From Chrysemys picta bellii (Eukaryota), in contig NC_088799.1 of NCBI RefSeq assembly GCF_011386835.1, positions 23,312,001-23,376,000 on the forward strand: 64,000 nucleotides of DNA, read 5' to 3'. The first letter of the stretch is position 1; the number at the start of each line of letters is the position of its first letter. The translations under genes were made by a program, and so were the position numbers. Below are positions 20,801 to 23,929 of this stretch, in pieces. The notes under the pieces are model-generated. The model saw nothing but the letters and a program-made list of their open reading frames with translations. It was not told the origin of the DNA and searched no databases.

Positions 20801-23474
20801 CTCTACCTCTTAACCCCTCATGCCCTGCCAGTTCTGCCTGCCTCTACTTCCCAGCTCTCCTCCAGGGCTCCCAGAGTCTCCTTTCTCTGACAAAGTCCAT
20901 TCCTTACTCTCCAGCCTGTCTCCTTAGCTCACCAGGAGCACGCGCAAAGCACAGCTAGAGAATCAATGAGGCAGGTTGATAGTACTTAAAATGAGAAGCC
21001 TGAGAGAACTGAGCAGTCCCATAAGATAATCTTGGCAAAAATTAATTAGGTTACCCTAAATAAGGAAAATAATTCTGGTTTTAATTTTAAAATTGCATAG
21101 GTGACCTATTTCATGAGATATTATTACTTTGTGTGCACAAGGGTGAAGTTTGGAATTAGAGAAACCAGAAGAAATGAGAGGAAACCAATAGAAAATTTAA
21201 GAAAGAAAACATTCTGAAGTGTTTTCTCAGCAAGGTTAGTGAATATTTTACCAATTTTTAAAAATACATTGGTCCTTTAAAGAGTTAACGTGCCTCATTT
21301 GGAAAATAAATTAAAGCTATTTGTGTGAAAGGGGAATTTAGTCTTGCTTTAAGCACAAATCCCAAAGCAACATCATCTATGGAGCGCTACTGACGTCACA
21401 ATTATATCTATAGTAGTAATAGTATTACAGTAATTCCCACAAACACTAACTTAATATTAGGTATGAAGCAACAAATGAGTGCAACGAACAGACGAAATGA
21501 GAGAAAAGAAAATGAGAAGTGATGGCACTAAAATACATTCTGAAACTGAACCCAATCATTAACTTTTTTAGTTTTATGGATAAATTATACTTTTTAAAAA
21601 GTTGTAAATCAGCATGGGATAATATCACCATTCTGGAGACTCAAGTTTATGGATAATCCCACTCCCTGGGCTAATGGAAATTAGGTATATGAGATAAATG
21701 ACTATCTTGTTATGACCTATGCATCTTTAAAACACCTGTTTTATGTTGATCTGTGGAGCCACCTTCATAACAATTACCTAAAACTGTACTTCCTACCTTC
21801 ATTACTAAAGATATGAGCATAATGGTGGTCAAATTACAGTAAGGGAGGGACATAAAAAAAAAGTTCAAAAGGACAGAGTCAGCCTAGAATGAAATGGGTG
21901 GTACACTGGATGCTTCATATTAATGAAGCAACCCTCCACAAAAAAAGTCTAATTCAAAATTTTTTTTCTGGTTTTCCAACTGCTTTCTCCAAATGAAACA
22001 TTATAAAAATTCTGCAAACAAATGTCACATTAGACATATATGAAGTTATGCTTAAATCTCATTCTTTAAATATGGCACCTTTTTAAAGTGCTGGAGTGCT
22101 GATAAAATAAAAAATATATAATTAGAATCATTACTTAGTAGAACTCAGCAGTAAGCGAACAGCACTTATGCATTCATATGATTTAGCTTTTTTATATCAA
22201 TGAAAGGCATCAAAGCAGCTGTCACTGGCAGCTATCTGGCCTTATTGATAACTTAAGAGCCCTTGGCTTTGCCTTATGAAGTTTAATTTCCCAAAGCGGT
22301 CAATTAGAACTTGGTAATATCCTCATTGGTGGATTATTGCTCAAGGATATTGTATAAGCTTTTGCTTCACCTCTTTATTTTTTCACTGCATTCACATAGA
22401 CAAACTTTTTTTTATTTCCTTTGAGAGACTCAAAGATGATAGCTAAAAAGTTTTTTTTTTTTTTTTTTTTTTTTTTAAGAAAAAGCCTATTAGTAATGTA
22501 ACCTCTAATGCAATTGCCAACTCCAAAAGAGAAATCTTACATGTTGTTGGTTTATTGATGGAACCAGAACAAAACATGGTCTAACCTTACCATCTACAAA
22601 GGATGACAGGCTCCACGAACAAGTTCAATAATGTGAATTCAACCAGCTTCTCCCCCAGCCACAATTCTGTATTTGAAGTGGAATGTAAAATGTCCTCAAG
22701 TATTTTACTTAAATATATATGTTTTGAAGTACCTAACCAAGCTTTGTAATTTTATATTCCACCCATTCCATCCCTCACCTCCACAAAGACAATGTTTACT
22801 CAGGTCCAATATTATGTGGTTCTGCGTAGTTAACGCTATGTGACAGTGCTAAACTGTCTAGAAAGCAGAGTTTAAACATAATATAAAAAAGAATCTGAAT
22901 CAGTACATCACAATTTTAAAAGCACAAACCCAGCAGTTAAAGCCAATCAAACAATAAAAGAGGGGAGAAGTGGTCTAAGAAATATTTAAAGAAAACAACA
23001 CTGCTTGATCTTACCTAAGATTTCTATCAGTCTCTCTTTGGAAAATGCTCAGATTCATTTCCAGAAGCAATGCTGTCAAAGAAGCACTTAGCGAGAACTT
23101 TTAGAAGAAGTGTGACCAACTGTTCACCTCTGTCTTTCACAATTGTCTTGTGCTGGTCCCTCTCCTTCCGCTCTGACTATTCAGTCAGTCTCCCCTTTCT
23201 TGAGTCCTCCTTCACTTCTCCAATCTCCACCTACAGGACTCCATCCTTAGAATACTCTTCCATCCACCCACTTTTCCTTGGGTGAGCTCCTCCACTCTCA
23301 CAATTTCAAATTACCATCTTTATGCTGATTACTCAATAACCTGTCTTTCTAGTCCTGACCGGTCTCTTCCCACTCAATCCCACATCTCAGTCTGTCTCTC
23401 CATCTCTTCCTCATGTCTTTAAAAAGCAACAGAGGGTCCCTGTGGCACCTTTAAGACTAACAGAAGTATTGGGA

Positions 23475-23515
23475 GCATAAGCTTTCGTGGGTAAGAACCT
23501 CACTTCTTCAGATGC
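23475..23515 (-). ncRNA. Minimal type I hammerhead ribozyme motif (mirror copy)
   Basis: Exact reverse complement of 23531-23571. It lies in the RSRC1 sense orientation. Confidence 0.6.
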
Positions 23516-23530
23516 AGGACTGATGTACTT

Positions 23531-23571
23531 GCATCTGAAGAAGTGAGGTTCTTACCCACGAAAGCTTATGC
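23531..23571 (+). ncRNA. Minimal type I hammerhead ribozyme motif
   Basis: GCAT-CTGAAGA-A-GTG(A)GGT TCTT ACCCAC-GAAA-GCTT-ATGC. The CUGANGA and GAAA boxes are intact, helix I is GCAT/ATGC, and the AAGCTT palindrome sits at helix III. Confidence 0.65.
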
Positions 23572-23929
23572 TCCCAATACTTCTGTTAGTCTTAAAGGTG
23601 CCACAGGACCCTCTGTTGCTTTTTACAGATTCAGATTAACACGGCTACCCCTCTGATTCATGTCTTTAGTAAGGCCAAAAATGAAATACTTATCTTTCCT
23701 CCCCAGCTCTCCCTATGCCTCCCATTCTCCTGTCACTTTTGACACCACTGTACTACCTATAAAATTCTCTCTCATAATCTGGGCTTCCACTATAACTCTG
23801 CCCCTCGCTGTGACCCACACATCTAAGTTATGTTAAAAATCTTGCTTTCTTCCTCCACACATTCCCAAGGTCCATCTTTTTCCTTTGTTTCCACACAGCT
23901 ATGATTTTCAGTAGGCCCTCATCTCTTCA

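What the first reader, a model, noticed from the sequence alone, without database searches (positions are those of the whole stretch)
23411..23668. 206-bp palindrome with a hammerhead ribozyme on each strand, flanked by an 11-bp target duplication
Seen: arms at 23420-23516 and 23530-23625 differ only by one C and enclose a 13-nt spacer (ggactgatgtact) that does not match the sequence preceding the motif in the 4.0 kb copy. The unit is flanked by tcatgtcttta, and a complete hammerhead motif is encoded in both orientations. Established: Penelope insertions often carry an inverted partial repeat at the 5' end. Inference: a transcript of either strand, including RSRC1 pre-mRNA, can form a roughly 96-bp duplex that sequesters the ribozyme and offers an ADAR or Dicer substrate, and the DNA could extrude a cruciform. 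Near-identical arms imply a young insertion.
Basis: partly seen in the sequence, partly recalled or inferred. Interest (0 to 1): 0.8.

Follow-up and report, generated by a model that had tools for sequence, protein, structure and literature searches.

The report
Penelope retroelement fold-back insertion with hammerheads
The palindrome is real, but it is the ordinary head-to-head form in which Penelope-like retrotransposons often insert: a dead, truncated double copy in an RSRC1 intron whose two small hammerhead motifs are passengers locked inside a long hairpin.

Summary
Arms 23420-23516 and 23530-23625 match except for one extra C. They enclose 13 nt and are flanked by the 11-bp duplication tcatgtcttta. 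Each strand encodes a complete Penelope-type minimal hammerhead, which Rfam's hammerhead models do not detect.

The unit is the 3' end of a Penelope-like element (PLE), inserted once as two 5'-truncated copies head to head. Only the right copy carries a 32-nt "tail". Head-to-head arms, a one-sided 30-40-bp tail and a short duplication are published as the typical Penelope structure. A second, smaller example lies at 48321-48459.

The 13-nt "spacer" is probably native element sequence, so the right copy is simply 13 nt longer.

The inverted arm starts at the tail-less start point where many other genomic copies end. This favours reverse transcription primed from both nicked target strands, as shown in vitro for an anole PLE.

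Both flank junctions occur in runs from organisms whose flanks differ by up to about 1.5%. The insertion is therefore shared and old, not young or polymorphic.

Sequestration of the ribozyme in the hairpin (-196 against -11 kcal/mol) is supported by folding only. Editing, dicing and cruciform extrusion could not be tested.

Unchecked first-stage notes report similar fold-backs elsewhere in this genome. This is an ordinary structure.

The parts
23411..23421 (.). Left copy of the 11-bp target-site duplication (tcatgtcttta). Its last 2 nt overlap the inverted arm.
23420..23516 (-). Inverted, 5'-truncated copy of the PLE 3' end. It has no tail. Its outer end is the tail-less start point and its inner end is 1 nt before helix I of the hammerhead.
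   Evidence: many other copies end at the equivalent of 23625/23627 (table 7)
23475..23515 (-). Minimal hammerhead on the minus strand (core CUGAAGA at 23511-23505). The predicted cut lies between 23479 and 23478. This is the sense copy in the host pre-mRNA.
23517..23529 (+). Hairpin loop. These are 13 further nt of native element sequence present only in the direct copy.
   Evidence: (table 3)
23517..23657 (+). Direct, 5'-truncated copy of the PLE 3' end (141 nt), including the tail.
23531..23571 (+). Minimal hammerhead on the plus strand. The predicted cut lies after U23567.
23626..23657 (+). One-sided 32-nt 'tail', the stretch between the two alternative 3' end points of the family.
   Evidence: (loose ends at 23625, 23627 and 23657); PMC11167929
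23658..23668 (.). Right copy of the target-site duplication.
48310..48470 (+). Second insertion of the same family. It is 139 nt long, has an 11-bp duplication (agactgtatgt), and starts with a 13-16-nt inverted copy beginning at the same tail-less point. The tail is again on the right only.
   Evidence: I11
2958..4083 (+). Longer copy of the family. An ORF piece with a weak GIY-YIG match is followed by the hammerhead-bearing terminal region, which ends without a tail. It ties the arms to a Penelope-like element.

Best explanation
This is one integration event of a Penelope-like retroelement (PLE) in an intron of an RSRC1-like gene on the minus strand. It left two 5'-truncated copies of the element's 3' end, head to head.

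Shown:
- One 11-bp duplication brackets the whole unit.
- Both arms carry the same subfamily-specific variants.
- The inverted arm begins, with 2 nt of overlap with the target, at the tail-less end point of the family.
- The direct arm runs on through a 32-nt tail.

Inferred mechanism: the element's GIY-YIG nuclease nicked both target strands 11 bp apart, and each 3' end primed reverse transcription. The top strand started at the internal, tail-less site and the bottom strand at the site 32 nt further 3'. Both cDNAs stopped at the 5' edge of the hammerhead, 13 nt apart. One end then jumped onto the other cDNA, which joined them without filler.

The hammerheads are passengers. On either transcript the antisense copy is made first and the sense ribozyme second, so the ribozyme zips into a roughly 97-bp duplex. 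It also has no second sense copy with which to form the dimer this ribozyme type needs. No selected function is indicated. A long intronic double-stranded RNA is a likely by-product.
For: - Anatomy.
- Link to a PLE: the arms are homologous to the region directly downstream of an ORF piece with a weak GIY-YIG match (Pfam E 0.0035, below its cut-off; Atlas 0.96 to GIY-YIG/HTH_animal clusters).
- The hammerhead meets all sequence features of PLE minimal hammerheads listed in PMC4209133.
- Published 'typical Penelope structure': an inverted terminal repeat at the 5' end, a 31-bp tail on one inverted repeat only, and a 9-10-bp duplication (PMC3846280). Craig et al. describe an inverted 5'-truncated copy and a 30-40-bp tail (PMC8557442).
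- The anole PLE protein cleaves and extends both strands, and starts reverse transcription at two internal sites whose interval is the tail (PMC11167929).
- In three genomes many copies end at 23625/23627 or at 23657 or beyond (table 7).
- A second insertion at 48321 begins its inverted piece at the same point but has very unequal arms.
- Many other antisense-to-sense joints of this family exist: 15 are listed and 211 further joints are not shown (table 5).
- Energies.
Against: - The centre of the palindrome (23516|23517) is not individually confirmed by an independent contig or long read. Only the two outer junctions are.
- Two-strand priming rests on two loci in this window and on in vitro work in another species.
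- About half of the listed joints elsewhere in the genome are nearly symmetric, which fits self-priming better.
- The GIY-YIG match is below Pfam's cut-off, and no reverse-transcriptase domain of the family was examined.
- Lack of function is an inference from the element's ordinariness, not a test.
Confidence: 0.68

Rival explanations
1. Same element and a single event, but the fold-back arose by self-priming. One cDNA snapped back on itself and copied itself, as proposed for Penelope by Arkhipova et al. 2013.
For: PMC3846280 infers self-priming from palindromes at inverted junctions. The two arms here stop only 13 nt apart. Many other joints of the family are nearly symmetric, for example 23466>23579 and 23490>23556 (tables 5 and 5c).
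Against: A snapped-back strand would copy the tail too, yet the inverted arm stops exactly at the tail-less start point. The 3' end of the presumed cDNA has essentially no complementarity at the required priming position (1 of 3 nt, by my reading). The 48321 insertion has 13-16-nt versus about 125-nt arms.
Confidence: 0.2
2. The hairpin has been co-opted as a source of small RNAs, or as an ADAR-edited regulatory element of RSRC1 splicing.
For: It is a perfect duplex of about 97 bp in an intron and is retained in at least three related taxa. Weak hairpin-type matches to microRNA models appear.
Against: All microRNA matches are far below gathering scores (45 against 100, 43 against 75, 36 against 70). 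Retention at about 1.5% divergence is what neutrality predicts. The family has a very large number of copies and many fold-backs. No RNA data could be read.
Confidence: 0.07
3. Assembly fold-back artefact: the inverted arm does not exist in the genome.
For: PLE inverted structures are known to trouble assemblies (PMC8557442). No listed contig spans the centre at locus-specific identity (table 8).
Against: Single-copy-depth contigs from three organisms run from the unique left flank into the antisense arm (to 23439/23449). Others run from the tail into the unique right flank (table 8). A change of orientation must therefore lie between them. The duplication sits exactly at the outer ends.
Confidence: 0.03
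4. Two independent insertions in opposite orientation, or a MITE-like DNA transposon with terminal inverted repeats.
For: Long inverted ends plus a duplication resemble a MITE. The family is extremely abundant.
Against: Only one duplication brackets the whole unit. The arms share private variants (CUGAAGA, the bulged A in helix II). The tail is on one side only. Non-palindromic copies have the same 11-bp duplication. The arms are the 3' end of an ORF-bearing retroelement.
Confidence: 0.02

Closest known systems
Typical Penelope insertion structure (e.g. Pen2a_Av of Adineta vaga; Arkhipova et al. 2013, PMC3846280; Craig et al. 2021, PMC8557442)
   Same: A head-to-head inverted terminal repeat at the 5' end, a tail of about 31 bp on one inverted repeat only, a short (9-10-bp) duplication around the whole unit, and frequent 5' truncation.
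   Different: Here there is no ORF and no direct repeat pair. Both copies are truncated to 97 and 141 nt, so the whole insertion is a bare hairpin.
Poseidon element of Anolis carolinensis (PAc; Frangieh et al. 2024, PMC11167929)
   Same: There are two alternative internal start points for reverse transcription, and their interval is the tail. The protein cuts and extends both target strands, and the hammerhead lies next to the start region.
   Different: It is a different species and family, and the evidence here is only the genomic footprint. In PAc no homology between target and start site was seen, whereas the two loci here show 2-3 nt of overlap, which may be chance.
Minimal hammerheads of metazoan PLEs (Cervera and De la Pena 2014, PMC4209133)
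   Same: The core boxes, an unpaired base after position 9, the G10.1-C11.1 pair, a long helix II, a 4-bp helix I and a palindromic mini helix III are all present. Such motifs are reported in turtles and snakes, and pairs of motifs on opposite strands 100-700 bp apart are reported in Schistosoma.
   Different: Helix II carries a bulged A. The two motifs are only about 20 nt apart at their 5' ends. Cleavage is untested.
Twin priming of human L1 (5' inversions); own knowledge, Ostertag and Kazazian 2001
   Same: A second target strand primes reverse transcription internally on the RNA, giving an inverted 5' segment within one duplication.
   Different: In L1 the inverted and direct segments are different parts of the RNA. 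Here both cover the same part, which makes a palindrome.
Inverted Alu pairs in primate introns; own knowledge
   Same: Retroelement-derived intramolecular double-stranded RNA in pre-mRNA, which is the classic ADAR substrate.
   Different: Alu pairs come from two separate, diverged insertions. This is one event with near-perfect arms, and editing has not been shown here.

Membership tests
Penelope-like element, head-to-head insertion form | Sequence belongs to a retroelement that encodes a GIY-YIG endonuclease downstream of a reverse transcriptase | tested here: inconclusive
   The arms align with the region just downstream of a 274-aa ORF piece at 2958-3779. That piece has a weak GIY-YIG match (E 0.0035, 18.1 bits against a cut-off of 22.6) and an Atlas score of 0.96 to GIY-YIG/HTH_animal clusters. 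No reverse-transcriptase domain was examined.
Penelope-like element, head-to-head insertion form | Inverted 5'-truncated copy adjacent to the direct copy, joined at their 5' ends | tested here: met
Penelope-like element, head-to-head insertion form | Optional 30-40-bp tail on one end only | tested here: met
   The 32-nt tail at 23626-23657 is present on the right only. Other genomic copies end at 23625/27 or at 23657 or beyond.
Penelope-like element, head-to-head insertion form | One short target-site duplication around the whole unit | tested here: met
   11 bp, exact. A second copy of the family also has 11 bp.
PLE-type minimal hammerhead ribozyme | Core boxes CUGANGA and GAA, A15.1-U16.1, and cleavage triplet NUH | tested here: met
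   CUGAAGA, GAA, A-G-C-U and triplet CUU on both strands
PLE-type minimal hammerhead ribozyme | Unpaired base between positions 9 and 10.1, a G10.1-C11.1 pair, and a long helix II | tested here: met
   A23542 is unpaired, and helix II has 6 bp plus one bulged A closed by G-C.
PLE-type minimal hammerhead ribozyme | Helix I of 4-5 bp directly flanking the core | tested here: met
   GCAU/AUGC appears in the MFE. Other copies have GCGU/AUGC and GGCAU/AUGCC, which is only weak covariation.
PLE-type minimal hammerhead ribozyme | Self-cleavage | not testable with these tools
   Published single minimal motifs did not cleave alone (PMC4209133).
Rfam hammerhead families | Score at or above the gathering threshold of an Rfam hammerhead covariance model | tested here: not met
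   There is no hammerhead hit in the window at the gathering threshold, nor in 23300-23800 at E<=10.
microRNA precursor (Rfam mir-3431, MIR529, MIR172) | Score at or above the gathering threshold | tested here: not met
   45.2 against 100, 43.1 against 75 and 36.5 against 70 bits. These are generic hairpin matches.

The most novel reading that the evidence does not exclude
Bare fold-back insertions like this one are natural records of a concerted two-strand integration by a dimeric PLE enzyme. The outer end of each arm marks where reverse transcription began on that target strand, at the tail-less or the tailed site. The inner junction marks a jump of one cDNA end onto the other. A census of the fold-backs in this genome could then settle the disputed PLE integration pathway (self-priming versus two-strand priming) without biochemistry. 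As a side effect, these elements would give this lineage a large stock of near-perfect intronic double-stranded RNAs, playing the part that inverted Alu pairs play in primates.
Probability: 0.4. Interest if true: 0.45.

Novelty: new member of a known kind. Interest (0 to 1): 0.2.

Why it matters
As a single locus it matters little. It is a fixed, dead retroelement fragment of a published structural type.

Its modest value is as a clean footprint: one duplication, two arms with different start points, and no filler at the junction. That footprint agrees with the recent in vitro finding that a PLE enzyme primes on both target strands at two internal sites.

The family is very abundant here, and fold-backs recur. 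They could therefore be mined to test integration models, and they may be a major source of long intramolecular double-stranded RNA in this lineage's introns.

Tried and rejected
- Rfam search of the whole window at gathering scores, and of 23300-23800 at E<=10. It gave no hammerhead family, only sub-threshold microRNA-like hairpin matches.
- A hammerhead reading with a 3-bp helix III hairpin (AGC/GCU, cut after C23573). I rejected it because no helix I can then form with the bases before the core. The minimal reading gives GCAU/AUGC.
- A search for raw RNA reads to look for A-to-I editing or small RNAs. None was offered, and every run was kept as contigs. The one guessed RNA run (X15) covers parts of the flanks at depth 3-4 with no differences and says nothing on editing.
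- The region 54.5-60 kb as a possible 4-kb full-length copy. It has no PLE ORF.
- Pfam on the RS-rich exons gave no family. The RSRC1 name rests on my memory of the human protein.
- Earlier findings by place returned nothing.
- A filler origin for the spacer, rejected after finding ggactgat in the 3990 copy's upstream region and high read depth over the spacer.

Full report
**Observation.** Arms 23439-23516 and 23530-23607 are 100% complementary over 78 nt. The pairing continues to 23420/23625 with one extra C in the left arm, and 13 nt lie between the arms. The 11-bp tcatgtcttta lies at 23411-23421 and 23658-23668. Its last two bases also pair as part of the arm. Either RNA strand folds into one hairpin of -196.1 or -192.6 kcal/mol, with z about -28 and -27 against shuffles. 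Single-stranded DNA gives -125.8 kcal/mol.

**The hammerhead.** Rfam finds no hammerhead, either at gathering scores over the window or at E<=10 over 23300-23800. It returns only generic, sub-threshold microRNA-like hairpin matches. Read by hand, each arm encodes the minimal hammerhead that Cervera and De la Pena described for Penelope-like elements (PMC4209133):
- helix I GCAU/AUGC (23531-34 with 23568-71)
- CUGAAGA (23535-41)
- one unpaired A
- a 6-bp helix II with a bulged A, closed by G10.1-C11.1 (23543-59)
- GAA, then the palindromic A-G-C-U as the whole of helix III
- a CUU triplet with the cut after U23567

The mirror copy is on the minus strand at 23515-23475. The minimum-energy fold of one arm alone reproduces helices I and II at -10.8 kcal/mol. 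Other copies in the window keep the motif with small helix I changes (GCGU/AUGC at 3990; GGCAU/AUGCC at 59740). The same paper reports that a single minimal motif did not cleave and that dimers cleaved weakly. It also reports such motifs in turtles and snakes, and pairs on opposite strands in Schistosoma.

**What the unit is.** Three further copies of the same sequence family lie in the window.
- The copy at about 3990-4083 follows directly on a 274-aa ORF piece (2958-3779). That piece has a weak GIY-YIG match and a feature score of 0.96 to animal GIY-YIG/HTH_animal clusters. The arms are therefore the 3' terminal region of a Penelope-like element.
- The copy at 48321-48459 is a 139-nt insertion with its own 11-bp duplication (agactgtatgt). 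It begins with a 13-16-nt inverted copy of its own tctgttgcttttt(aca), which is the same point where the long inverted arm begins at 23420.
- In both insertions only the right end carries the stretch that follows gcttttt, a tail of 32-34 nt.

**The spacer.** The 13 nt are not foreign. The last four continue the alignment with the 3990 copy. The first eight (ggactgat) occur 47 nt upstream of that point in the same copy (this 8-mer occurs only four times on both strands of the window). Contigs of other genomic copies cover the spacer at roughly 35 times single-copy depth (table 3). The direct copy is thus 23517-23657 and belongs to a subfamily that lacks about 40 nt. The inverted copy is 23420-23516. 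The loop is simply the 13 nt by which the direct copy is longer, and there is no filler at the junction.

**Reads.** All runs offered were contigs, so starts, strands and editing cannot be read. They do show three things.
- Contigs at single-copy depth run from the unique left flank into the antisense arm (to 23439 or 23449). Others run from the tail into the unique right flank. This holds in organisms B, C and D, whose flanks differ from the window by 0/842, 4/852 and 12/773 positions (tables 3, 8). An orientation change must therefore lie between the junctions. It also means the insertion is shared by taxa about 0.5% and 1.5% apart. One indel between 97-nt arms is what that age predicts, so 'young' is not supported and insertion polymorphism is unlikely.
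- Summed depth over the arms is four to five orders of magnitude above single copy. This is only a rough sign of a very large family.
- Many copies end at 23625/23627 or at 23657 or later (table 7), and many other antisense-to-sense joints exist (15 listed, 211 further joints not shown; table 5). Unchecked first-stage notes on other pieces of this genome also list similar fold-backs.

**Mechanism.** The literature describes this architecture as typical of Penelope:
- an inverted terminal repeat at the 5' end, a 31-bp tail on one inverted repeat only, and a 9-10-bp duplication (PMC3846280)
- an adjacent inverted 5'-truncated copy and a 30-40-bp tail at one end (PMC8557442)

Frangieh et al. showed that an anole PLE protein cuts and extends both target strands. 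They also showed that it starts reverse transcription at two internal sites whose interval corresponds to the tail (PMC11167929).

At this locus the inverted arm starts at the tail-less site, directly on the top-strand target end with 2 nt of overlap. The direct arm starts at the tailed site. I therefore infer that both nicked strands primed cDNA synthesis, that both cDNAs stopped at the 5' edge of the hammerhead 13 nt apart, and that one jumped onto the end of the other.

The older self-priming model is the main rival. It fits the near-symmetry here and in many other joints. It does not explain why the inverted arm lacks the tail, and I find no priming complementarity at the required place. 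The 48321 insertion also has very unequal arms.

**Consequences.** The host gene runs on the minus strand. An ATG exon lies at 43446-43250 and the next exon at 36803-36678, both RS-rich with good splice sites. The translation matches my memory of RSRC1. The palindrome lies about 13 kb into the following intron. On either strand the antisense copy is transcribed first and the sense ribozyme second. A transcript holds only one sense motif, so neither the monomer fold nor the dimer can compete with the duplex. Editing, dicing and cruciform extrusion are reasonable expectations for such a hairpin, but none was tested.

**Verdict.** This is a real but ordinary Penelope fold-back insertion: a new instance of a known structure, with modest value as a footprint of two-strand priming.

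Noticed in passing
window 48310-48470: A 139-nt insertion of the same PLE family with an 11-bp duplication (agactgtatgt). Its first 13-16 nt are an inverted copy of its own tctgttgcttttt(aca), making it a miniature fold-back that starts at the same point as the large one. Its hammerhead lacks helix I because of the truncation.
   Followed up: partly
window 2958-4083: The 3' part of a PLE. It has a 274-aa ORF piece with a weak GIY-YIG match, then the terminal region with a hammerhead whose core has decayed (CUGACAA). It ends without a tail at about 4083.
   Followed up: partly
window 59740-59880: A divergent PLE terminal copy with a tail. Its hammerhead has G in place of C11.1. The copy is flanked by a short inverted repeat (ctcttgcca / tggcaagag) rather than an obvious direct duplication.
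   Followed up: no
window 43446-43250 and 36803-36678 (minus strand): Two RS-rich coding exons with AG/GT boundaries and an ATG at 43437. The translation resembles the N-terminus of RSRC1 as I remember it. A GC-rich stretch at about 57.4-58.0 kb may be the promoter or first exon.
   Followed up: partly
window 10493-10554 (minus strand): A tRNA-like match just at Rfam's threshold (29.1 against 29 bits). It is possibly a tRNA-derived SINE head rather than a gene.
   Followed up: no
window 40433-40537: A decayed hairpin with 46-nt arms at 78% complementarity, again with a 13-nt spacer. It is of unknown origin and might be an older fold-back insertion.
   Followed up: no
window 38219-38406: A pair of 24-nt inverted repeats (92%) 140 nt apart, which looks MITE-like.
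   Followed up: no
Read laying joints on 23462-23617 (tables 5, 5c): Several antisense-to-sense joints of the family recur at depths well above single copy, and some are exactly symmetric with short, varying letters between (e.g. 23490>23556). This suggests hot spots for fold-back formation near helix II, or amplified fold-back copies.
   Followed up: no
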